A stretch of 64,000 nt of DNA from Caecitellus pseudoparvulus (Eukaryota > Protista > Bigyra: Bicosoecida), in NCBI GenBank assembly GCA_965644315.1, contig CBFFRQ010000006.1, positions 1 through 64,000 on the forward strand. Direction: 5' to 3'. Both the position numbers and the translations under genes were made by a program. Shown in pieces: positions 1,656 to 33,853 of this stretch (positions are counted from its first letter, which is position 1; each line of letters starts with the position of its first letter). A model generated the notes under the pieces. The model was not told the origin of the DNA and searched no databases. It saw nothing but the letters and a program-made list of their open reading frames with translations.

Positions 1656-4600
1656 TCAACCGCACTCGTCCGAAGGGCGGAGTTCCCCAACGTACATGAA
1701 CTGCAGGCTATTCCCTGAAGCCGCAGCATCCACCGCAACAGCTCTTAACGTTTCACTCAGGTTGAGGTGCGCGCCCTCTCCTCCGTTGAGCTGGGCGCCG
1801 GCCGCACCGGAGGAGGGGCCACCCTCGCTCATGCTGGACAGAGTCGCTGTGCTGTCACTGTCGCTGTCTGCGCCATGCTTGCTCGGCACTTCTCGCAGCA
1901 TCCCAGCACTGGGGAGTGGCATCAATGCGCTGTGTGTGGTGCCGCCCCGTGGCTTCGACTCAGGCAGCCCCAAGTGCGTGGTCTGCACGCCCAGTCGCAG
2001 CAAACGACCCGCAGCAGGCAACTTGGTGAGGAGCGATGCCACAGCAGTGGGGGATGCCACGCCGCCGCATGCCGGAGCGAAGACGGGGTTTGTCCGGGGG
2101 TTGCCGGTGGGTGGCTCTGGCAGGAGAACGCTCTCTGGGACGGGGCCAATGCGCCACACAGCCAGACGTCGCAGGCCTGTCGCCACGGGCAGCAGAGACA
2201 CGCCCAAGCGCTGGACCAAGCTGGACACGACGCTAGGTGCGACGTGGGGGGTGAACGAGAGGGACAGAGTGTGCAGGGCCTTGCACTGGCCCATCGCAGA
2301 GGCAAGCATGGACACATGGTCTGGTGTGAGCGGCGTGGGACCCCGTCGTCTCGAGCGCCCCCCCGCTTCTCCCTGCCGGCCCATCAGCACGGCAGCCGCG
2401 ACATCCCCCAGGGTTTGGGGGGCGGAATCGCTGCCAGCGCCCACGGACACCGCCGCGTCCAGGCGGGTGTGCGTGGAAAACGACGCGAAGGACACCACGG
2501 ACACGGCGTCAGACCCGGAGCGGTCAGGGGAGGCCGGGCCTCGCTTGCCCTTGTACGACTTGGTGCCGGTCCGGCCCCGACTGCCAGGACTGCCGGTGCT
2601 GGAGCCGCTGCCGAAGTTCATGGCACGTGTTCCAGGCCTGAAGGATGTCGAGACGCGCTTCGCCCTGGCCTTCACGCGGGGGGCAGCACCCTTGCTCCCC
2701 GCCTTCCCCTTGGCTGCTCGGGCTGCCTTGCGATCCAGCACCGCCTGGGCTGACGGCGGCAGTCCGTTGGCGCTGAACAGTGCGTCGTCGCCGGCACTTG
2801 CAGTGTCTGGCAAGCTGCTTTCCTCGGGTGCATGACTCGTCGAGTATGAGAGAGCGAATGCGGCTTCTTCTGGGGTCAGGGATGCCAGGTCACGCACACC
2901 AGCCTCGGAGGGTGGTGCTGCCGCATCGCCAGCCTTGGGCGGCGCGCGAGCTGGGCTCTTGCGGCTGCTGGCTGTGCCGCCCACGGCAGATTGCCGCCGC
3001 GATTTGACGCTGCGCTTGACTGCCGAGGCGGTCGGCGCCTTGGAGCGGGCCAGCGTGTCCCGCCGTGCGACAGATGAAGCCAGGCCGCCGCTGTCATCGC
3101 TCCACCCCCCCACGCTGCCTGCGCGTGGCGTCCCCCCGCCGCCACCGCCGCCCTGGCCTTTGCGGAGGAAGGAGGGCGTGCGTCCAGCTCCTTCACTGCG
3201 ACCAGCGGTGACGGCAATGGTGCCTCGTCGCTGCTTTGTGCGGGAAGCCGCTGTTGTGGCCACCGCCACAGATCGCCGGCGGGCCTTGGCACTGCCCTTG
3301 CCAGGCCCCGGACCACCCCATGTGCCGTGGTCAGCGAGTGCGTCCACGAATTCAGCATTCTTGGCGGCTGCGGTGTCTTTGGACGAGCCTGAGGCAGATG
3401 TCGCGCGGGATGTTCGCGTGCGATGTGGGGTCGCACCTTCATCCGCCTCTTGGGGGTGATCGTCGCCCCAACCAGGTGGATACCCGCCCTCCAACTGGCC
3501 ATACCTGTGGGCAAACTTGTACAGCGTGTACGCAGAAGGCGATGCGAGAGTGGCCGCGCAGTACACCAGCGAGTCTTTCCACACGTGCAGAGCAGCTGCC
3601 AGAGCAAGTGCTGCCTGTGCATCGCAGGATGTGCCTGTCAGGTCCAGGCACCGCAAGGTGGGGGAGCTGCGTCGAAGCGCCGAGAGAATGGCCACCATGC
3701 CGTTGCCCGGCACGCCCCAGTGCCGCAGCTCGCATCGGATCAGCGGTGAGACGTGGCGGAGGCCCTTGATGAGGGCCTTCACCCCTGCCCTGGCCATGAG
3801 GGTGTTGGCAGCTGGTGGGTTCATCTCAGGCATGAACACGTTGGCGTCTCTGTCGACGTCCACCTCTGGGCGGGGCGGCACGACGCCCCCCGCCATCTCA
3901 AACCGTGCAGAGCGCTGGCCCTGCCACGTCCACTCCTCAGGCGGCGTGCGTGTGTCGTACCAGTCGGCGGCGTGGGAGCCGCCAGGGTGCCCGTTCAAGG
4001 CCAGGGACTTGAGCAAGGGCCAGGCAGTCAGGCTCTGACCCACCATGGACACTGTTCCCGCCGTGATCTTCAGCTCCGAGAGCGTGAGGGAGTTCAGGCG
4101 CCGACAGTTAAGCAGGCCAGACACGAGGGCCGTGGCGCCGGCATCCGACACCGTCACATCCCGGCTCAACTCAAAGCTGTTCAGGGTCACAGCCGTGCCG
4201 ATGGTGTACCCGAGCGCGGCAGCGCCTGCATCAGTGAGGCAGCAGTTGGTGATGTGCAGGGAGTGCAGGTTCCCTGCCGAGGCCAGGGCGCTGGCCAGGC
4301 CTGCCCCGCCAGCATGCCCGAGCGGGGTGTGCCGCAGGTTAAGCTGGGCCAGAGGCAAGGGCGACGTTTCCAATGTGGCGGCCAGTGCCTGCATGTCGTC
4401 CCCTGGGTTGGCTGAGGAGACGTGGGACAGGGTCAACTCCGTCAACTCCGTGCACCAGGCCAGGGTGGCGGCGAGGGGGCGGAGGTGGAGCTGCCCGCCG
4501 TCGTCCCGCCCTGGCACGAACTCGTCCCCCGTGGCCACGCTGGCGCCGTCGTCGCTGTCGCCGAAAGACACACCGCGACGGGGCGAGGCAGACTCGGCTT

Positions 4601-26009: not shown

Positions 26010-26522
26010 ATGGCACAGGCTTTAGACGAGCTTTCGTTGCTGTACGAGAGCACGGAGGAAGGGGGCTTGCTGGTGTGCTTCGAGGAGGATGGACGAGCAT
26101 TCTGCGTTGCCGTGTCGGTCGTGAGGGACGCGCTGCTGTCTGTCATGGCCAGTCCGGCAAGCGATGTGCGAGTGCGTCCATCTCGAAGGCAAGACGTTTT
26201 TGATTGGCTGGCTGACTTGAATAGCACTTTGGAGGAAGGCACCGCAGAAGTCAATCCGTACGAAGGGCACTTGCGTTTCCGGTATGCAGTGCCGTTGGCT
26301 CTCGAGAAGGGACTGCCCACGGACGGGTACAAAGGCATTGCGAAGCACTTGATCTTGGCTGCCAAGCACGAGCTGCTTCGGATTTGGGAGGAAGCCGAGG
26401 CCCTCGGGCTGCTCGTGCAAACTTCGCCTGGCGCAAAGGCTGCGCTGCAGACTCCACCCGAAGCCGAAGCGTCCACTGCAGCAGCAGCGGCTGCAGGTCA
26501 CACCCCTTCCAGCCAGGACTGA
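26010..26522 (+). CDS. YbjN-like (T3SS-chaperone-like fold) domain protein; start uncertain, frame open from 25827
   Basis: VRVRPSRRQDVFDWLADLNSTLEEGTAEVNPYEGHLRFRY matches the YbjN pattern P..R..V...L...N..L..G.......G..RFR. Confidence 0.55.
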   Translation: MAQALDELSLLYESTEEGGLLVCFEEDGRAFCVAVSVVRDALLSVMASPASDVRVRPSRRQDVFDWLADLNSTLEEGTAEVNPYEGHLRFRYAVPLALEKGLPTDGYKGIAKHLILAAKHELLRIWEEAEALGLLVQTSPGAKAALQTPPEAEASTAAAAAAGHTPSSQD

Positions 26523-26897
26523 CTGTGAATGGTCTCTGGAGCGCGCAGCAGCACGTTGGCCTTGTTTGAGACAAGCGTCTCAGGACCTACATGACTGGCT
26601 GGCGCTTCAACAGCCTCGGCGCGATTGGCCCAAGGAACGGGGGCAGCACATTCAGAATGTGCGGACGCCTGTAGGCTGCCACTGTCGTGTATGGATGTGT
26701 GCATGGTTGTTGCAAGTCCACATCTTTCGGTCCATGATTTGACCCGGCTATCAGACAAAGCAACTCAGCAGCTCCAGACAACCAATGCACACGACCGGGC
26801 ACATTCCACACACCCCGGCCTCTCCACCACTGACAAACAGCCTCGTTCTGCGTTTGCATTCGAATCCACACACCAGGACCTGCTCTGCAGCTCCCAA

Positions 26898-26921
26898 GGT
26901 GCGTCACGGATTGGTGGATCA
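26898..26921 (+). repeat. Left TIR GGTGCGTCACGGATTGGTGGATCA
   Basis: Exact reverse complement of 31414-31437; extends to 27 bp with one mismatch. Confidence 0.93.
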
Positions 26922-27230
26922 AGGCGAGATACCAACGGCTTGTGTCAATCCTGTGAGATCAACACATCGACTTAGAATCTTTCTATGTTTGCGCTAGTTG
27001 ACTGTCGGGAAAAAGAGAATGTACCATGCCTGAGGAACTGTTTTAGCCATTTTGGCGAGATCAACGAGCCGAACCTTGATTTTTTGCCCCAGGCGTTAGT
27101 GAGAAAGGGGTCGCACGCTGTCGAGACAGGAAATCAACCCTGAGAGAGTCAGCACTGCAAGAGCGGCGATTAGGACTCTGGAAATCAAGCATTGGTACAA
27201 TTATTCGGGTGTTGTGGCATTTTCGAGGCA

Positions 27231-29374
27231 ATGGAGTCCACCCAATCACGCTTGGTGCAGCCGAGCGTTTCTGTCACCCCGACAACGGCAGCATCCGTTG
27301 AGCGACGGGCCTCTGCGCCACATTCTGCATGTTGCGTGATTCAACATGTCGGTCACAAGTTGATCAAAAGGGTATACCATAAAACACAAAAGCTGCGGGG
27401 CACGAAACGTCGCAACATCGACCGCAACGACTCGATGGAGGGGGCCAGGCTGCACCCCAAAATCCGCAAGGGGACACCCACCTACGAATTCCTCACATCG
27501 GGCGAGTGCCTCACCTTCATGCGCATGAGAGCAAGAAATTTAGCCAAAGCCCTCTCTGGCTTGATATCGGACAGCTTCTTGAGGTGGAACGCCCTCAGGG
27601 ACATCCAGAATGGGCGTGAAGCCGACCTCTTGCTCGGGGTGATGATGGTGTGTGCCGGGCGCAACCGCCAAGAGATCACGTCTAGGCTGAGCATTGCCGC
27701 TACTACTCTCCAAGACAGCATTCCTCGGTTGATTCCAGTGCTGAAGACCTTCTTTTACAAAGCGCTGCCCTGGGCAGTGCTTCCAGAGCACCGCAGAGAG
27801 GCGCTTTCCTTCCATGGTGGACTGGCTCCAGGGCTGGTAGGGTTCGTAGACGGCCTGACATGGGAGACGAAAGCAACTTCTTCAGACAAAGAGAACCGCA
27901 TCTGGTACAGCAACCACCAATCGATGTACGGGTACAACTTTCTGTTGTTCTGCAGTGTTTCGGGGAGGGTTATATGGATCGAACCCATGGGCAAGGGCAA
28001 CACAGTGTCTGAGATTGCAGCCGCGCGACGAGCAACCGAGCGCATGCTGCGCTCAGGCGCCATCAAGCAAGGCGAGTACTTTGTCGGTGACGGTGTATTC
28101 CAGGGAGTCAGGCCTGCTGTGCGGCACCTTCCGGGCAACAAGGCGTTGGAGAAGATGGCGGCCCGAGTTCAGTCTCTGTGGGTCTCCTCGCCAGCCCCTG
28201 GCTCTCTGCATTCTCCACGGGACTTGGCAAGAGCAACGGCTTCCGCCCTGGCACACAAAACTGTGCAGCGTGAGATCTTCGTGTCAGGTCGCCAGGTTGT
28301 CGAGAACTGTGTGAAGGAGTTCAAGACGGTGTGTGGTCTCGTCCGATCGTCCAGTGTCAGACCATTGCAAGCGCAAACCAAGGAAAAAGAGATCAGAGAC
28401 ATGGGGTACATTACTGCTGGGATGCTCGCTTTCCAACAAGCAGAGGGGCACCGGGTTCCTCGGTCAGAGCAGTGGCTCCACATCCGCGGTTCGCGTCAGC
28501 CAGCACTCGTCCTGTTTGAGCTGTTTGCATCCTTGGCTGGAGATTGTCCTGCTTCTAATCGCCGTGACAGTGAACTTGACGCAAGCCTTCCGAGCGGCAT
28601 CGCGAAACGAAGGAGCGTATCTTTTCTTCATGACGTCTTACGGCTGCTTCGCGGGGCCGAGTTGGGTACGGCCGGGAGGCCTTCACTGGAACGAAGCGAT
28701 ATTGAGGCTGCTACTCAGCTGCAGCAAGTGCTCGCCTGGTCGGAACAAGGGAACTTGTCTCCTCTTGTAAGTGGCATTTTGTGCGGTGGTCTCACAGAAC
28801 TTGGCAGGCTGAAAAAGCAGCGCAGGCAGGTAGCTGTCTCGCCACGCTCTGGTGTCGCATCCCCTGGGGGGCCTCCTCTCCTGGCATCATGGCATCGCCA
28901 CACTCTCCACCTGGATACTGCCGCCCCGCCAAGACTGACGACGACAAGGTACGCCCACAGGAAGTCATGGATCTTGAAAAGCTGTGGGGTGCTGCAGCAG
29001 ACAAGGCTGCTCTTGCCGGCAAGCCAGTTGTAGTCGGCAAGTACAATCATGATCCTGAGCTGTCCTACCCTCGTGGGATCGTCTACGCTCTTATTGAACC
29101 CACTCGAGACACCGCCACTTTTGAGGAGTCAGAAGAGGCGTATGATGTGTGGTACTATGACAAGTACGGAGATGAACTCCTCGAGACCCTCCCTGATGGG
29201 CAGACCGGAGGGCACTTGCTCACATCCCTCCTTGAAGCAGAGACCCGCGACGTGGCAAAGAAAGACTACACGTGGCTCCCACCAGAGCACTTCAAGGAGG
29301 ACTTTGACGGGAGTCAGCTTGTCGCGTACATGATGGATTGTCAGTCCTACAACTACGGCTACGTGAACGAGTGA
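27231..29374 (+). CDS. DDE transposase (Harbinger/ISL2EU-like DDE_Tnp_4 with HTH), with a probable spliced C-terminal exon
   Basis: HTH-like segment LLLGVMMVCAGRNRQEITSRLSIAATTL. Catalytic-type motifs GFVDG (D at 27849), VGDGVF (D at 28089) and RQVVEN (E at 28302), plus WYSNHQSMYGYNFLLFCSVSGRVIWI. The unspliced ORF ends at 29033. A phase-0 intron from 28830 to 28933 or 28960 joins it to the ORF ending at 29374. Confidence 0.85.
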
Positions 29375-29379
29375 AACAA

Positions 29380-30843
29380 TCACGGGGAGTCAGAGTGCCC
29401 TCGGCGGCGTCTGTTGTATCTCGCTACGTCTTGGAGAAATGCATCTCCTGTGCTTGGCACGTTGTCAGTGAAGTTTGGGCGAGTTCTCTTGTGACCGCCA
29501 ATGGTGGGGCGGTCCGAAGCCTCGGGTGAAGGAGTTGGGGCGGGACCACCTAATCCTTCTTGCCGCATCGCACCAGAAGAGCTCGGTGGGGCACGAGAAG
29601 AAGATGGTGACCTCGAAGCACTTGCAGTGTCAGCGGGAATGTGCCCAGTTTGTGAAGAAGCTATGACACTGAGGAGCTCCACAGCTCTCCTCTGATCTGC
29701 CCGGCCCTGGTCCACTTTGTCCACGAGCAGCACGAGCATCTCTGCCATTTTCTCGAATGGTGCAAGAAGGGCAATCGCATCACGAGCAAAAGCATTTACT
29801 GCCGAAGAAATGCCCATCCCCACCAGCGCCGATTGACGCGCAGCTTCTGCTCGGGCAGCACGTTGCGCATCGGGCTCCACGGGCTCTTCCCCAGGCTGTG
29901 ACTGTCCGGCCAGATCGTGCGAGTCATGAGGCAGATGAGGATTCTCGAGCAACGCGCTGTGGCTTTGGGTGCTACTCGCAAAAGACGAATCCAAGGAGCT
30001 CTCTCCGCTGCCCTCAACTGGACCCAGCCCTCCGGTGGGCGGCGTGGGTTGGGGGGCGGGTGCTTGCCCCAGAGATATCCCGAGGGAGGGGACAGTAGGA
30101 ACGTTGCTGGCACTTCCTTGCGATTCTTGACTTACAGCTGACCCTTGGATTCCGGGTGGCCCCAGTGAACCCTGCTGGGTGTGGAGTGTTTGCATCGGCA
30201 AGCCAACAGCGTGGCTCTGGACCTGCGTGAAGGTTGCCAGGCTCGCACGAGGGGCGTTGTGGAGGTCCAAGAGTCTGCGGACCAACCACATGTCAATGAG
30301 AGCATGAAAGGAAATAGGTACGATGTCCTCGTAAACACGGAACATGGTCTGCACCATGTCCGCGACGGTTGGGTAAACAGTCCGGCTGGTGCTCGGTAGG
30401 CCTCGCATGGCACATGCCTTGTCCCACAGCTCAGTGAACACGTCTTGGAACTCAGCGTGTGCCTTGTTCAGGTTCTTCCTTGTTGCATGGTAAAACATGC
30501 AGTGGGTAGCATGAAACACGGCTGATGCATGTGCCTTGCACTTCGGCCGGGAGCACAGTCCATGACTGTCCAGCTTCTGGAAGGAGAATTCGGGGATGAG
30601 AGCGGGGTCCAATACAAAGACGGGGGCATTTCTGTTCGAAAGGCGCAGGATTGCGTCGCCCAGGATGTGTCCATCCACGGGGATGCCCAATTCAGAGAGC
30701 ATGGTAGCTGGACTTTGTAGGTTGTTTGCACCACTCGGGTCAAAGGGGCGCTCCCGAGACAGACAAGAGAAGGAAAGTGAGCCAGGAGTTGTGCCCAACA
30801 TGCCCCCCGTCACCGGGGCGTCCTTTGTGTTGTAGAGAATCGC
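29380..30843 (-). CDS. Transposon second gene (putative Harbinger-type accessory/DNA-binding protein); 5' exon unresolved
   Basis: 477-aa ORF inside the TIRs, convergent with the transposase. Globular N-terminal half with a Cys/His cluster, disordered linker, amphipathic helix and basic NLS-like tail (HKRTRP, RRRR). A pyrimidine tract plus TAG acceptor precedes 30843. Confidence 0.7.
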   Translation of the reverse strand, partial: AILYNTKDAPVTGGMLGTTPGSLSFSCLSRERPFDPSGANNLQSPATMLSELGIPVDGHILGDAILRLSNRNAPVFVLDPALIPEFSFQKLDSHGLCSRPKCKAHASAVFHATHCMFYHATRKNLNKAHAEFQDVFTELWDKACAMRGLPSTSRTVYPTVADMVQTMFRVYEDIVPISFHALIDMWLVRRLLDLHNAPRASLATFTQVQSHAVGLPMQTLHTQQGSLGPPGIQGSAVSQESQGSASNVPTVPSLGISLGQAPAPQPTPPTGGLGPVEGSGESSLDSSFASSTQSHSALLENPHLPHDSHDLAGQSQPGEEPVEPDAQRAARAEAARQSALVGMGISSAVNAFARDAIALLAPFEKMAEMLVLLVDKVDQGRADQRRAVELLSVIASSQTGHIPADTASASRSPSSSRAPPSSSGAMRQEGLGGPAPTPSPEASDRPTIGGHKRTRPNFTDNVPSTGDAFLQDVARYNRRRRGHSDSP

Positions 30844-31413
30844 CTATTTGGCAAAGGAGGGGGGGAAGTGTGACGGTATGCGTAGCGATTTCCGCACACC
30901 GTTTCAAACCCTCACAGCTGCAAGAATGGTGTGCTCCGGTGGACTCAATGCAGTCCCCCTTTGTGACTTCGCACGCCGATCTAGCCTCCCTTGGGCTTGA
31001 AGTCCCGCCTGCTTTCACGGTAGGGGAGACCTTGACCTGTGAGCAACGCTCAAAATCTTGCCGTTATGCTCACCATTCAAACTGTGCTCGAGACTTGCTG
31101 AGGAAAGTACCAAGACCAAGGCACTGAGTGGCAATTCAGTGCAAAGCGGAGAAACAGATGAGTATCCGTTTTAGGCGAACGAGCGGGCCTACGTTGCGCT
31201 GGGGCAGGGCTGCCGATCGAGACACGAGCACAAACGGCTACAAACACCCGCGTACTGCCGCACCCTCAGTTGCACGAAAAAAAGAACACCCAACAAGGCA
31301 TACATGAGTGGATGGGAGGCGCTGGTAAATTCATATTGCACAACACCTCCTCACTGTGGAAATCGACTCCGCTGGTGACAAATCACAGGGGCCCCTGGAG
31401 TTCAAACCAACCC

Positions 31414-31437
31414 TGATCCACCAATCCGTGACGCACC
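31414..31437 (-). repeat. Right TIR TGATCCACCAATCCGTGACGCACC
   Basis: Exact reverse complement of 26898-26921. Confidence 0.93.
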
Positions 31438-31554
31438 CCAACACGCCGTGAGGTGAAGTGGATCTGACGGCTCTTGCAGCATTGCCGAAGCCATCACTCC
31501 TTGCGGCACGTGGGCAGCCGCACAAGCACCAGCCACACCCAGAAGCTTCTGACA

Positions 31555-33853
31555 ATGCTCGCTGTACCTCGGGGTGGCGTGCTGGAGAGCTTCGGCGAGG
31601 GGCGTTTCTCAGTCCAGACAGGGCTGCTCGCAGCGCCACGATCTTCCGCTGCGGCCCAGCCTGATGTTGACGACGGCCAAGAGGCTGCAGTGGCGCTCAA
31701 GCACACTGCACACCATACCCGTCTCGCTCCAGGTTCGAGCTGTCTAGCATGTCAAAGGGGGAAGCGCAAGTGTGATGGGAAGGTGAGCGTGTTGCGGAAT
31801 TTGCGCGTTGCTGGATGGGCGTGCACCACCGTGCCCTGCTCCCTGCTCCCTACAGCGACCTTGCGCCCGTTGCGAGTCCAAGGGCATAGTGTGCGAGGAC
31901 GGGGATGCCGCGCGGAAGCAGGCCCGTCGCAAGGCGAACTGGAAGGCGCGGGCAGCGCTGGTGCCCAAGCAAGCAGCTGGCTCAGCTGAGCACCCAGTAG
32001 CCACGCCGCATGCTCTCCCTGCACACGACACGCCGAGTTCCCAGCCCTCAGTCACGACATCCGACCCTGAGGAGGGGCTGGGTGACTGGAGCTCTGCTTC
32101 CAGCCTCGCCTCAGGCAGCCCTGGAGCTGGTGGAAACGCTCCAGATCACAAGCTGGTGCGAGCTGCTCGCCGCTGGCGCCACAGTCAGCACTACAAGCCC
32201 CAGCACCGGTTCAACACGGGGTACTTCTTGAAGCAGGCAGCTGAAGCAGGCATTGACCCTGTGCAGCTGGTGCAGCACCTGGACACGCTGCTGCGTTCGG
32301 GGGACGATGCGACTCTGCTGCGTTTCAGTTCCGGCCCCGGACCAGGTCGCTCCCTTCCGGTGCGCCTCGTGGAACCCATAGCTGCGTGGTTAGGGCCGTT
32401 GCAGCTGCAGCGGCAGCTGGGGGCAGTGAATGGGCTGCGTTCGAGTCAAGAGCTGGCTCTGCCGTCCCTGCGGTTTGATGCAGTGCACTTGACGTACGCC
32501 GGCTTCGCAGCGACGCTCTGCGCTTTGCACTGGGATGACGAGGTGGCGGTGTGTCCTGCTGGGTACGCAGCAGTGCAAAGTGTTCCAGGTGGGGCGCAGC
32601 AGAGCGCCAGCGGCGACGATGAGCCTGCAGGAACCGTTGCAGAGTGTGCTGGCATGCAGACTGTGCCGTTGGAGGTGTTGTTTGGTCGCTGGCCACACTT
32701 GCCCAGCGTGCTGTCTTCAGCGGACGCGGAGGTGGTTGCTGACGCAGAGGGCTTTCTCGCAGCTCTGGGGCGTGGCGAGCTGGCGCCTGTGCCGTGGAGC
32801 GTCACGAGTCGGTTTCATGAACATGTGCGATGTTTGCACTTTCCAGTGTTTTCGCACTGCCTGGAGCCGGACGGACTGTCTTCGTACTTTCACTCTGTCA
32901 GCGAAAAGGCGTTGGACCTGTTCGGCGCTCAGCACTGGCCTTCCATGGATGCCAAACGCAGTGTGGCCGAGGAGGCGGCGAGGCAGTTCATGCCGCCCGC
33001 TGTGGCCATGATGCAGGACGGGCAGAAATTTCTCCACCCTGACGCACTGCTACCGCGCTGTCTGGCGCTTCTCGCAGCACAGAACATGGGCCTCTCTGCA
33101 TTTCAGTTTGAGGGCTTGTTCTTGCGTGCCCTGCCACCCACACCTGCCGATTCTGGACACCAACCCTCGGTGTCGTTTTACGGCGTCGAAACGCAGTTCT
33201 TGGAGCGCTACCGCGACGGCTCGCCCCTGGCAGTCACGCACTACTTCTCAGACGTCATGTTTGCCCGACAGCTGCCCCCTGTGCCTTCTTCCCAGCACAT
33301 GGAGCGCGTTGTGGGCGTGCTGGAAGCTCTCTCAGTCCCCTCGTCAGACACGCCCCTGCACATGCACCTTGCCGTGCGCCGGACCGGTAAGCACCCCCTC
33401 CGCGTGTTGAAGGACCTCTCAATTGACAAACATGCGCGTGCGATGTTTGCTGGGCTGTCTACCTTCGTGCTTGAGCCTGCCATGCGGCTGAAGGGCGACT
33501 CCGCGCTCAAGCGGCATTTGGACAGCTCACAGCCGCCGCCCGGCTGCCCAGCCGACCCCACGCGCCGCAACATCGCCCTGCGCTTGATGGGAGTCGTGCA
33601 GGGCGTGCAGGAGTCCCTTCCCCCTTCCGAACTGGAGTGGCTGCAGGCTGACATGCAGGACTGGCGGCGGCGGCCCTCCAAGCCAGCTGTTTTCTGCATG
33701 GGCCCATCCCGCGTGAGGGACGACGCGCCGATCATGGAGGTGTTGCCGGAAGGCAGCGACATCACCATGGGCGCCTGTTGCCCCAGCCTGGAGGCCAGTG
33801 CCCGTCCTGCTCCGGAGTCAGGAGCCAGCAGCCACGCCACTGCGCCTGCCTGA
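31555..33853 (+). CDS. Zn(II)2Cys6 (GAL4-type) binuclear-cluster transcription factor
   Basis: Removing the phase-0 intron 31783-31855 (GTGAGC...CTACAG) gives CLACQRGKRKCDGKRPCARCESKGIVC, the canonical Cx2Cx6Cx5Cx2Cx6C. The start ATG at 31555 is inferred. Confidence 0.85.

What the first reader, a model, noticed from the sequence alone, without database searches (positions are those of the whole stretch)
26898..31437. Intact two-gene PIF/Harbinger-like transposon, possibly a new divergent lineage
Seen: perfect 24-bp TIRs, flanking direct repeats, an uninterrupted transposase ORF with intact D/D/E motifs, and a second convergent ORF whose stop is 5 bp from the extended transposase stop (29374/29380). 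Known: PIF/Harbinger elements encode a DDE transposase plus a Myb/SANT-like partner. Inference: a young, probably active element whose TSD length, transposase extension and partner protein all deviate from textbook Harbingers.
Basis: partly seen in the sequence, partly recalled or inferred. Interest (0 to 1): 0.82.

Follow-up and report, generated by a model that had tools for sequence, protein, structure and literature searches.

The report
Active two-gene transposon, undescribed Harbinger-related lineage
This is a recently active 4.5-kb jumping gene in a marine protist, distantly related to Harbinger/IS5 transposons, that differs from every described Harbinger-type group in its 4-bp insertion scar, its long transposase and its partner protein.

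Summary
Window 26898-31437 is a 4540-bp DNA transposon. Its terminal inverted repeats are 24 bp perfect and 27 bp with one mismatch. A 4-bp target-site duplication (CCAA) flanks it. It carries a DDE transposase gene and a convergent second ORF, with 5 bp between the two stop codons.

The genome holds at least 9 full and 2 partial copies at about 99.9% identity. Six copies have clean 4-bp duplications of varied sequence. The exact empty site is present in four sequencing runs, including one of the same organism, so this insertion is polymorphic and recent.

One correction: the complete transposase is 714 aa. In the window copy a G6 run (28866-28871) splits it; four sister copies and three runs' contigs, seemingly short-read, read G7, so G6 is probably an assembly error.

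An exhaustive search of 1.84 billion proteins found eight real relatives, all metagenomic. All six full-length relatives whose complete contigs I fetched have the same layout: a transposase of about 700 aa plus a convergent ORF. Three sister families sit in this genome, and two of them make 5-bp duplications. Described eukaryotic Harbinger-type groups make 0-3 bp. The partner protein has no Myb/SANT domain or any other recognisable domain.

Verdict: a new lineage within a known superfamily. The scan has already noted sister families on other DNA of this genome. A tree with named reference families could not be built.

The parts
26894..26897 (.). Left copy of the 4-bp target-site duplication (CCAA)
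   Evidence: The empty site keeps a single CCAA (the joint skips 4544 = 4540 + 4).
26898..26924 (+). Left terminal inverted repeat (starts GGTGCGTCAC; 24 nt perfect, 27 nt with one mismatch)
   Evidence: pair I1. The same terminus occurs 19 times exactly in the genome.
27231..29374 (+). Transposase gene. It encodes 714 aa when the G run is G7. In this copy it is split into 27231-29033 (600 aa) and a C-terminal part in another frame that ends at 29374.
   Evidence: Pfam DDE_Tnp_4 scores 26.1 bits against a cut-off of 24.8.
27615..27755 (+). Predicted three-helix (HTH-like) DNA-binding region just upstream of the catalytic core (residues about 129-175)
   Evidence: AlphaFold model with helices 129-140, 145-152 and 156-175 at pLDDT about 85. 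The equivalent region of relative P0009 gives a weak HTH_Tnp_ISL3 hit. The role is inferred.
27831..28330 (+). RNase H-like DDE catalytic core: D207 (27849-27851), D287 (28089-28091), E358 (28302-28304). A roughly 25-residue insert between the second D and E is absent from ordinary DDE_Tnp_4 proteins.
   Evidence: The triad is invariant in alignments A3 and A5 (their numbering is one residue lower). Secondary structure is, the insert is seen in the core alignment, and codon positions are.
28866..28871 (+). G6 homopolymer that breaks the frame in this copy. It is G7 in 4 of 10 assembled copies, in metagenome contig L014, and in the contigs of runs X1, X12 and X6.
   Evidence: (table 4).
28952..29371 (+). 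C-terminal domain of the transposase (about 140 aa; conserved EPxR...WxxWxY...G motif), a hallmark of the clade. Its fold is not identified.
   Evidence: Conserved in a 36%-identical relative and across 10 family members. The model has pLDDT 65, and the best PDB match is Z 3.5 to a PWWP domain, which is not significant.
29380..30801 (-). Second gene (ORF2, 473 aa from the first ATG; 477 aa from the GTG at 30813), convergent with the transposase. No recognisable domain.
   Evidence: No Pfam, NCBIfam or Atlas hit. Among proteins, the word search found only its own cluster. An ORF of 357-531 aa sits in the same position and orientation in all six full-length relatives whose complete contigs I fetched, and one of 363-467 aa in the three sister families of this genome. 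The cut contig of P0002 shows the start of one. The codon-position GC pattern looks coding.
31411..31437 (-). Right terminal inverted repeat
   Evidence: pair I1.
31438..31441 (.). Right copy of the 4-bp target-site duplication (CCAA)

Best explanation
This is an autonomous, currently or very recently active cut-and-paste DNA transposon of the PIF/Harbinger-IS5 (PHIS) kind. It belongs to a small clade, not matched to any described group, that so far is found only in this marine protist and in marine metagenomes. The 714-aa transposase has an RNase H-like DDE core (D207, D287, E358). By inference, its N-terminal helix-turn-helix region recognises the 24-27-bp inverted repeats. It excises the element and inserts it at cuts staggered by 4 bp, and repair of those cuts leaves a 4-bp duplication of no fixed sequence. 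The convergent second gene most likely encodes an accessory factor needed for transposition, by analogy with the second protein of Harbinger elements. It is not a Myb/SANT protein and it evolves very fast. Shown here: the ends, the duplications, the copy set, the empty allele, the intact reading frames, the catalytic residues, and conservation of the layout across the clade. Inferred: which protein binds the ends, what ORF2 does, and what the C-terminal domain does.
For: TIRs and TSD. The assembly holds at least 9 full and 2 partial copies at about 99.9% identity with different flanks. Six copies have matching 4-bp TSDs: TTAA, ATCT, CCAA, AAGA, TCTT, CATG. The exact empty site (a skip of 4544 bp) appears in runs X1, X10, X12 and X6. 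X12 and X6 also carry the element at other sites, about 1.7% diverged in X12. An intact 714-aa ORF is present in four copies and in metagenome contig L014. DDE_Tnp_4 hits occur in the query and in 6 of 7 clade relatives scanned. The DDE triad is invariant and the core model is confident (pLDDT 75-90 over residues 70-500). The best PDB matches are DDE transposases, though weak. Only 14 of 1.84 billion representative proteins match at E<=0.001. Nine are this family (the element's own protein plus 8 relatives) and the rest are weak ordinary DDE_Tnp_4 proteins. The same convergent two-gene layout is found in all six full-length relatives whose complete contigs I fetched and in 3 sister families of this genome. 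The cut contig of P0002 shows the start of a convergent ORF, and P0004 was not looked up. The clade separates from 7 ordinary DDE_Tnp_4 proteins with support 95/97 on full length.
Against: No RNA run holds the element, so expression is unproven. The window copy as assembled is frameshifted. ORF2 has no significant sequence similarity to most of its positional counterparts: the best is E 0.047 by BLASTP and E 0.011 at 4% probability by hhalign. Its homology and function therefore rest on position and coding-like composition. On the DDE core alone, the split of the clade from ordinary DDE_Tnp_4 proteins has only 51% ultrafast bootstrap (93.8 SH-aLRT). No named Harbinger, ISL2EU, Pangu, Nuwa, Spy or IS5 reference sequences could be included. 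One copy (contig C159) lacks a TSD.
Confidence: 0.85

Rival explanations
1. It is an ordinary, merely divergent member of a described PHIS group (canonical PIF/Harbinger, Harbinger2/Pangu, HarbingerS, Nuwa or PHISTA), so there is no new lineage.
For: It matches Pfam DDE_Tnp_4. It has two ORFs and GG-starting TIRs, as in Pangu, Nuwa and ISL2EU (Han et al. 2015, PMC4482050). Pangu partners also lack known motifs. Core-only tree support for a separate clade is weak. No named references were available.
Against: The TSD is 4 bp here and 5 bp in two sister families. Described eukaryotic PHIS groups make 0, 2 or 3 bp (PMC4482050; PMC12730594). Nuwa II alone is ambiguous between TNA and CTNAG, and none of the TSDs here fits either. 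The transposase is 630-730 aa, with a conserved extension of about 350 aa and an insert between the second D and E. The exhaustive search gives E above 1e-5 to everything outside the clade, although that library should contain annotated Harbinger-type proteins from sequenced eukaryotes. A canonical Harbinger with a TTA TSD exists in the same genome and falls outside the clade.
Confidence: 0.12
2. It is a bacterial IS5-type insertion sequence, either contamination or a recent transfer. From my own recollection of ISfinder, the IS5 group makes 4-bp TSDs; this was not checked here.
For: The 4-bp TSD and the intron-less ORFs. DDE_Tnp_4 and DDE_Tnp_1 models also cover IS5 and IS4.
Against: No NCBIfam IS5 model matches at E<=1. 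tblastn finds nothing in 72,556 plasmids at E<=0.01. The element is 4.5 kb with two long genes. The copies lie in many contigs of a 30.6-Mb assembly that earlier notes of this scan call a marine protist with TTAGGG telomeres (not checked here), and one allele of the source organism is empty.
Confidence: 0.02
3. ORF2 is not a gene but a chance open frame in GC-rich DNA, so the element is a one-gene transposon.
For: No domain, no significant homologue outside its own element, long low-complexity stretches, and no RNA evidence.
Against: A convergent open frame of 357-531 aa lies directly after the transposase in all six full-length relatives whose complete contigs I fetched, and one of 363-467 aa in the three sister families of this genome, down to 17% transposase identity. 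Pairs of closer elements do show ORF2 homology: L042/L044 at E 1e-29, C92/C181 at 1e-19, C19/L047 at 1e-7. In most of the ORF2s, GC at the second codon position is the lowest of the three, as in the transposases. By my rough estimate, not computed with a tool, a 477-codon stop-free frame in 58% GC DNA has a chance probability near 1e-7.
Confidence: 0.08
4. The family is no longer mobile: the copies are identical because of recent segmental duplication or assembly redundancy, not transposition.
For: Several copies sit at contig ends (C199, C212) and one lacks a TSD.
Against: Every copy has different flanks that start exactly at the TIR, and six have their own 4-bp TSD. The empty allele is precise. 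Other samples hold the element at other sites (loose ends).
Confidence: 0.04

Closest known systems
Pangu (Harbinger2 in Repbase), a PHIS group (Han et al. 2015, PMC4482050)
   Same: TIR-bounded elements with two ORFs: a DDE transposase and a second protein without any known motif. TIRs often start with GG or AG. Reported in algae and a heterokont as well as in animals and fungi.
   Different: Pangu makes 3-bp ANT duplications and averages about 3.5 kb, and its transposase has no extra domain. Here the TSD is 4 bp of varied sequence, the element is 4.5 kb, and the transposase is 714 aa with a conserved C-terminal extension. Sequence relatedness to Pangu could not be tested.
Canonical PIF/Harbinger
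   Same: DDE_Tnp_4 catalytic domain preceded by a helix-turn-helix. Two genes. Short TIRs that start with G. Size of about 4 kb.
   Different: Harbinger makes TWA 3-bp TSDs and has a Myb/SANT (MADF) partner. Both features were tested here and not met. A canonical Harbinger with a TTA TSD in the same genome is only distantly related.
Nuwa I / Nuwa II
   Same: Two ORFs and GG- or GGG-starting TIRs. Nuwa II TSDs could be read as 5 bp, CTNAG.
   Different: Nuwa TSDs are CWG or TNA (C|TNA|G) and the partner is a Myb/SANT protein. The TSDs here (TTAA, ATCT, CCAA, AAGA, TCTT, CATG; in sister families CCTAC, GCAGA, TTTGT, TCCGA) fit neither pattern.
ISL2EU and Spy
   Same: PHIS-type DDE core. ISL2EU TIRs start with GG, and ISL2EU has two ORFs.
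   Different: ISL2EU has a 2-bp AT TSD, a THAP domain in the transposase and a YqaJ exonuclease partner. Spy makes no TSD. None of these domains was found here.
Bacterial IS5 family (IS5 group)
   Same: Related DDE fold. A 4-bp TSD in the IS5 group (my own recollection of ISfinder, not tested here).
   Different: IS5 elements are one-gene elements of about 1-1.5 kb in bacteria. No NCBIfam IS5 model matched and there was no plasmid hit.

Membership tests
PHIS superfamily (PIF/Harbinger-ISL2EU-Spy, IS5-related) | DDE_Tnp_4-type catalytic domain | tested here: met
   Pfam PF13359 scores 26.1 bits against a cut-off of 24.8, covering profile positions 1-95 of 158. Clade relatives score 25.6-33.6 bits. 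The margin is thin and the match partial.
PHIS superfamily (PIF/Harbinger-ISL2EU-Spy, IS5-related) | Conserved D, D, E, with the first D on a beta strand, the second D after a strand and E inside a helix | tested here: met
   D207, D287 and E358 are invariant in 12 sequences. In the model D207 lies in strand 201-211, D287 follows strand 282-285 and E358 lies in helix 328-366.
PHIS superfamily (PIF/Harbinger-ISL2EU-Spy, IS5-related) | Groups with PHIS/IS5 transposases in a tree with named references | not testable with these tools
   No Repbase or ISfinder reference sequences are reachable. Only unnamed DDE_Tnp_4 proteins could be used as an outgroup.
Canonical PIF/Harbinger | 3-bp TWA target-site duplication | tested here: not met
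   Six copies have 4-bp TSDs of varied sequence. The empty site confirms 4 bp.
Canonical PIF/Harbinger | Second ORF with a Myb/SANT (MADF) DNA-binding domain | tested here: not met
   No Pfam or NCBIfam hit at E<=1 for ORF2 or for the six counterparts from metagenome contigs that were scanned. The three sister-family ORF2s of this genome were not scanned.
Pangu / Harbinger2 | 3-bp ANT TSD | tested here: not met
   The TSD is 4 bp.
Pangu / Harbinger2 | Two ORFs, with no known motif in the second | tested here: met
Nuwa I/II | CWG or C|TNA|G target and a Myb/SANT partner | tested here: not met
   Definitions are from PMC4482050.
ISL2EU | 2-bp AT TSD, THAP domain in the transposase, YqaJ exonuclease partner | tested here: not met
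Spy | No target-site duplication | tested here: not met
Bacterial IS5 family | Matches curated IS5-family transposase models or occurs in bacterial replicons | tested here: not met
   No NCBIfam IS5 model at E<=1. No tblastn hit in plasmids. Bacterial chromosomes were not scanned.

The most novel reading that the evidence does not exclude
The element and its relatives form a separate PHIS group of the same rank as Harbinger, ISL2EU/Spy, Pangu and Nuwa. So far they comprise 8 metagenomic proteins and 3 sister families in this genome. The group would be confined to marine protists. Its target cut has widened to 4-5 bp, its transposase has gained a conserved C-terminal module, and its Myb-type partner has been replaced by an unrelated, fast-evolving protein. 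At least two families of the group are active today in a marine protist, which would make them candidate genetic tools for that organism.
Probability: 0.55. Interest if true: 0.6.

Novelty: new variant of a known kind. Interest (0 to 1): 0.5.

Why it matters
Three reasons.

- It would add a lineage to the Harbinger/IS5 superfamily whose integration stagger (4-5 bp) lies outside the 0-3 bp reported for eukaryotic members. That gives a natural series for asking what sets TSD length in DDE transposases.
- The partner protein is not Myb/SANT, so the 'transposase plus DNA-binding helper' arrangement may have been rebuilt with a different protein.
- The element looks active in a marine protist: identical copies, intact genes, and a heterozygous or polymorphic insertion. 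It is therefore a plausible starting point for insertional mutagenesis or gene-delivery tools in a group of organisms that has few.

It is not a new kind of mobile element.

Tried and rejected
- **ORF2 function:** Pfam and NCBIfam scans, Atlas feature search, word search, BLASTP among counterparts and hhalign all gave nothing significant.
- **C-terminal domain:** Pfam and Atlas were blank. The isolated AlphaFold model is mediocre (pLDDT 65), and its best PDB match, a PWWP domain, is at noise level (Z 3.5). I do not claim a chromatin-reader fold.
- **Whole transposase against PDB:** only weak DDE transposase matches by fold (best ISCth4, E 2.6e-3) and nothing by sequence.
- **Intron hypothesis:** I first considered an intron joining the two transposase frames; a GTAAGT...CAG candidate at 28767-28797 has the wrong length. 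I rejected it once sister copies showed a 1-nt G-run difference.
- **Programmed frameshift at the G run:** rejected because contigs of three runs, seemingly short-read, show only G7.
- **Subterminal repeat motifs:** no motif of 8 nt or more occurs three or more times in the subterminal regions.
- **RNA evidence:** no RNA run holds the element.
- **Profile word search with A5:** unproductive.
- **TSDs of the metagenomic relatives:** these could not be established. Contigs of the same element carry different flank combinations, so they are probably chimeric across copies. L050 could be read as a CAG TSD, but from a single contig only.
- **dN/dS:** too few differences between the element and its 99.4%-identical metagenomic variant.


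Full report
**1. What is in the sequence**

The stretch 26898-31437 is bounded by inverted repeats at 26898-26924 and 31411-31437. They are 27 nt long at 96% complementarity, with the first 24 nt perfect (read directly). The tetranucleotide CCAA flanks both ends, at 26894-26897 and 31438-31441.

Inside, an open frame runs from the ATG at 27231 to a stop ending at 29033 (600 aa). It carries the motifs FVDGLT, FVGDGV and VVENCV, with D207, D287 and E358. A second frame continues to a stop at 29372-29374.

On the other strand an open frame runs from 30813 (first ATG at 30801) to a stop at 29380-29382. The two stop codons are therefore 5 nt apart.

**2. It is a mobile element, and a recently active one**

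The 4540 bp recur in the 30.6-Mb assembly as at least 9 full-length and 2 partial copies at about 99.9% identity. The terminal 24-mer occurs 19 times exactly, and its reversed control occurs 0 times. Each copy has different flanks that begin exactly at the repeat.

Six full copies have matching 4-bp duplications: TTAA, ATCT, CCAA, AAGA, TCTT and CATG. The copy on contig C159 has none. That copy has one AT-rich and one GC-rich flank, so it looks like a recombinant or a misjoin.

I laid contigs of four public runs on window 26200-32100. In all four, a joint skips exactly 4544 bp (4540 + 4). One is a run of the same organism that may be the source sample (depth 63.7, against about 40 for the filled haplotype). 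A run labelled as another organism (X12) and a marine metagenome (X6) bridge the joint with 228 and 255 nt on the shorter side. The empty allele therefore exists with a single CCAA, which independently fixes the TSD at 4 bp.

The same runs carry the element joined to other flanks. In X12 the element is about 1.7% diverged (67 differences over 3841 nt). In the joined empty site no long open frame crosses the junction, so the insertion is probably intergenic.

**3. The transposase is longer than the window copy suggests**

The word search found a 727-aa protein from a marine metagenome contig (P0001, 97% identical) that runs through both frames. It also found a 727-aa relative at 36% identity (P0002) that aligns along the whole length, including the C-terminal part.

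Aligning the assembled copies shows that four of ten have one more G in the run at 28866-28871. Those four encode an uninterrupted 714-aa protein from the ATG. The contigs of runs X1 (same organism), X12 and X6 all read G7. Run X10, which shows many single-base deletions typical of noisy long reads, mostly reads G6 (table 4).

I conclude that G6 in the window copy is most likely a homopolymer error of the assembly. A true minority of defective copies cannot be excluded.

A note on numbering: the alignments were made from a reference that lacks the initiator codon, so their numbering is one residue lower than the numbering used here.

**4. What kind of transposase**

Pfam DDE_Tnp_4 matches just above its cut-off: 26.1 against 24.8 bits, covering profile positions 1-95 of 158. 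DDE_Tnp_1 matches below its cut-off. No NCBIfam model for IS5-type transposases matches, and tblastn against 72,556 plasmids finds nothing.

An AlphaFold model built on nine family members is confident over residues 70-500 (pLDDT 75-90). It shows a three-helix region (129-175) followed by an RNase H-like core, with D207 on a strand, D287 after a strand and E358 in a long helix. This is the arrangement Han et al. describe for PHIS transposases (PMC4482050). Foldseek's best PDB matches are DDE transposases (ISCth4, Hermes, Mos1, piggyBac, Tn5) but are weak (best E 2.6e-3). None of the hits was annotated as a Harbinger- or IS5-type transposase.

**5. Relatives: a small clade with one shared design**

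An exhaustive HMMER search used a three-sequence profile against 1.84 billion cluster representatives. It returned 14 proteins at E<=0.001:

- the element's own protein;
- P0002 and P0004 (33-36% identity);
- six proteins of 690-712 aa (P0005-P0010, 17-25% identity);
- five weak hits (E 4e-5 to 9e-4) that are ordinary DDE_Tnp_4 proteins.

All eight relatives come from metagenomic or unnamed assemblies.

For P0005-P0010, every contig I fetched shows the same layout: the roughly 700-aa gene, then within 15-180 nt a convergent ORF of 357-531 aa, on contigs of 4.3-9.7 kb. The 2.8-kb contig of P0002 shows the start of such an ORF 2 nt after the stop.

Searching the window's own genome with the Pfam model revealed further families:

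- Contigs C92 and C116 carry a 673-aa transposase with a convergent 467-aa ORF.
- C181:506-3754 carries a 701-aa transposase with a 364-aa ORF.
- A family of at least 9 copies carries a 633-aa transposase with a 363-aa ORF (for example C19:423427-427838).
- Two groups are closer to ordinary DDE_Tnp_4 proteins: one at C78 and one at C53.

In a maximum-likelihood tree of full-length proteins, the twelve 'long' transposases separate from seven ordinary DDE_Tnp_4 proteins with support 95/97. On 165 columns of the catalytic core alone, the same split has 93.8 SH-aLRT but only 51% ultrafast bootstrap.

The long proteins also share several features:

- an insert of about 25 residues between the second D and E;
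- conserved RxPRS and RRD motifs after the core;
- a C-terminal module of about 140 aa with an EPxR...WxxWxY...G signature.

**6. Target-site duplications in the clade**

For the two sister families with at least two informative copies in hand, the TSD is 5 bp. It reads CCTAC and GCAGA for the family whose ends are TAGG...CCTA, and TTTGT and TCCGA for the C92/C116 family. The C78 element has a TTA TSD, like a canonical Harbinger, and falls outside the clade.

The published groups of eukaryotic PHIS elements make 0 bp (Spy), 2 bp (ISL2EU, PHISTA) or 3 bp (Harbinger TWA, Pangu ANT, Nuwa CWG/TNA). Only Nuwa II is ambiguous, between TNA and CTNAG (PMC4482050). A December 2025 paper still summarises the range as 0, 2 or 3 bp (PMC12730594). 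Two literature searches for Harbinger-type elements with 4- or 5-bp TSDs found no such element; the one phrase match, PMC12730594, does not describe one. These were full-text searches of open papers only.

**7. The second gene**

ORF2 has no Pfam, NCBIfam or Atlas match. Among proteins, the word search found only its own cluster. Its counterparts are barely alignable.

Significant similarity exists only between closer elements: L042/L044 at E 1e-29, C92/C181 at 1e-19, and C19/L047 at 1e-7. Against the L042/L044 pair the window's ORF2 reaches only E 0.047 by BLASTP and 0.011 by hhalign, with a shared G(L/I)PVxG and an xSAxxxAxxxxFxxxTxxNxxK stretch. That is suggestive but not significant.

Three things argue that it is a gene:

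- its conserved position, orientation and length across twelve elements;
- homology within sub-lineages;
- a coding-like GC pattern by codon position.

It is not a Myb/SANT protein. Its role as a helper of transposition is an inference from the Harbinger precedent.

**8. Derivatives and context**

There is no large MITE family. I found three kinds of remnant:

- a 64-bp element made of the two TIRs and 10 nt between them, at C56:397671-397734, plus a variant with a 13-nt spacer in run X1 (joint 26922 to 31412);
- a 103-bp right-end fragment at 93% identity (C99);
- two or three diverged solo termini.

Several copies lie in very AT-rich DNA, unlike the roughly 60% GC host sequence. Earlier notes of this scan mention endogenous virophages and a virus-nested Harbinger in this genome. 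I did not test whether these flanks are viral.

**9. Verdict**

The element is a young, very probably active, autonomous two-gene DDE transposon. It works like a Harbinger-type element. It fails the defining tests of canonical Harbinger, Pangu, Nuwa, ISL2EU and Spy: TSD length and sequence in every case, and for all but Pangu and Spy also the partner domain. It has almost no relatives in public protein space. I class it as a new variant (lineage) of a known kind.

The main gap is a tree with named reference families, which these tools cannot supply. Expression is also untested.

The scan's first-stage readers have already flagged sister families, and possibly this lineage, on other pieces of the same genome (s1-661177, s1-677921, s1-677837). 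I verified the 5-bp TSD and the TAGG termini of one of them here.

Noticed in passing
G000 contig C19:423427-427838 (L078:1082-5493) and at least 8 further copies; deletion derivative at C114:39259-41195 (L077): A sister family of 4412 bp with TIRs starting TAGGTCTCG, a 633-aa transposase plus a convergent 363-aa ORF, at least 9 copies at about 100% identity, and 5-bp TSDs (CCTAC, GCAGA). One copy is an internal-deletion derivative that joins positions 1-467 to 2932-4412.
   Followed up: partly
G000 C92:127127-131614 (L074:1152-5639) and C116 (L075): Another sister family of 4488 bp, with perfect 26-bp TIRs starting GGGTGCCTACC, a 673-aa transposase and a convergent 467-aa ORF whose end overlaps the transposase end by 4 nt. 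TSDs are 5 bp (TTTGT, TCCGA).
   Followed up: partly
G000 C181:506-3754 (L076), directly upstream of the copy of the studied element at C181:4309-8848: A third sister element (701-aa transposase, 49% identical to the C92 one, plus a convergent 364-aa ORF) lies next to a copy of the studied element. No TIRs were found within the 4.4 kb available.
   Followed up: no
G000 C53:514008-514499 and at least 16 further places; in seven contigs (C3, C45, C76, C79, C88, C90, C178) the match sits about 1557-2058 bases from the contig start: A different DDE_Tnp_4 family (577-aa ORF plus a convergent 598-aa ORF) with many identical copies. A striking number lie at the same distance from contig starts, which suggests a subtelomeric or otherwise fixed context.
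   Followed up: no
G000 C78:426370-430074 (L080:2755-6459): A canonical-looking Harbinger: TIRs starting GGCTTGCC, a TTA duplication inside a palindromic CAGC/GCTG context, a 308-aa DDE protein and a convergent 513-aa ORF. A second, shorter copy is on C13.
   Followed up: partly
Flanks of copies on C96 (L001), C91 (L004), C159 (L007) and C144 (L011): These insertions sit in very AT-rich DNA, unlike the roughly 60% GC of the genome. They may be integrated virus-like or virophage-like elements, which other notes of the scan mention.
   Followed up: no
Flanks of copies on C67 (L002), C212 (L008) and C149 (L010): Three otherwise unrelated insertion flanks carry the octamer CTGCCTCG ending 0-2 nt from the TSD. 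This is unlikely by chance. It could be a target preference or the end of another repeat.
   Followed up: no
G000 C56:397671-397734 (L038:101-164): A 64-bp miniature element that consists only of the two TIRs (the left one with 2 mismatches) and a 10-nt spacer, with no clear TSD. A variant with a 13-nt spacer appears in run X1.
   Followed up: partly
G000 C159:8435-12973 (L007): A full-length copy with an intact 714-aa ORF but no TSD (ATGG against ACAA), and with flanks of very different base composition. It is either a recombinant between two copies or an assembly misjoin.
   Followed up: no
window 26506-26660 and neighbouring flank: Contigs of the source organism's run show two haplotypes that differ at about 8 of 154 positions, at similar depth. 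This indicates a diploid or mixed sample with high heterozygosity. The transposon sits on one of the two haplotypes.
   Followed up: partly
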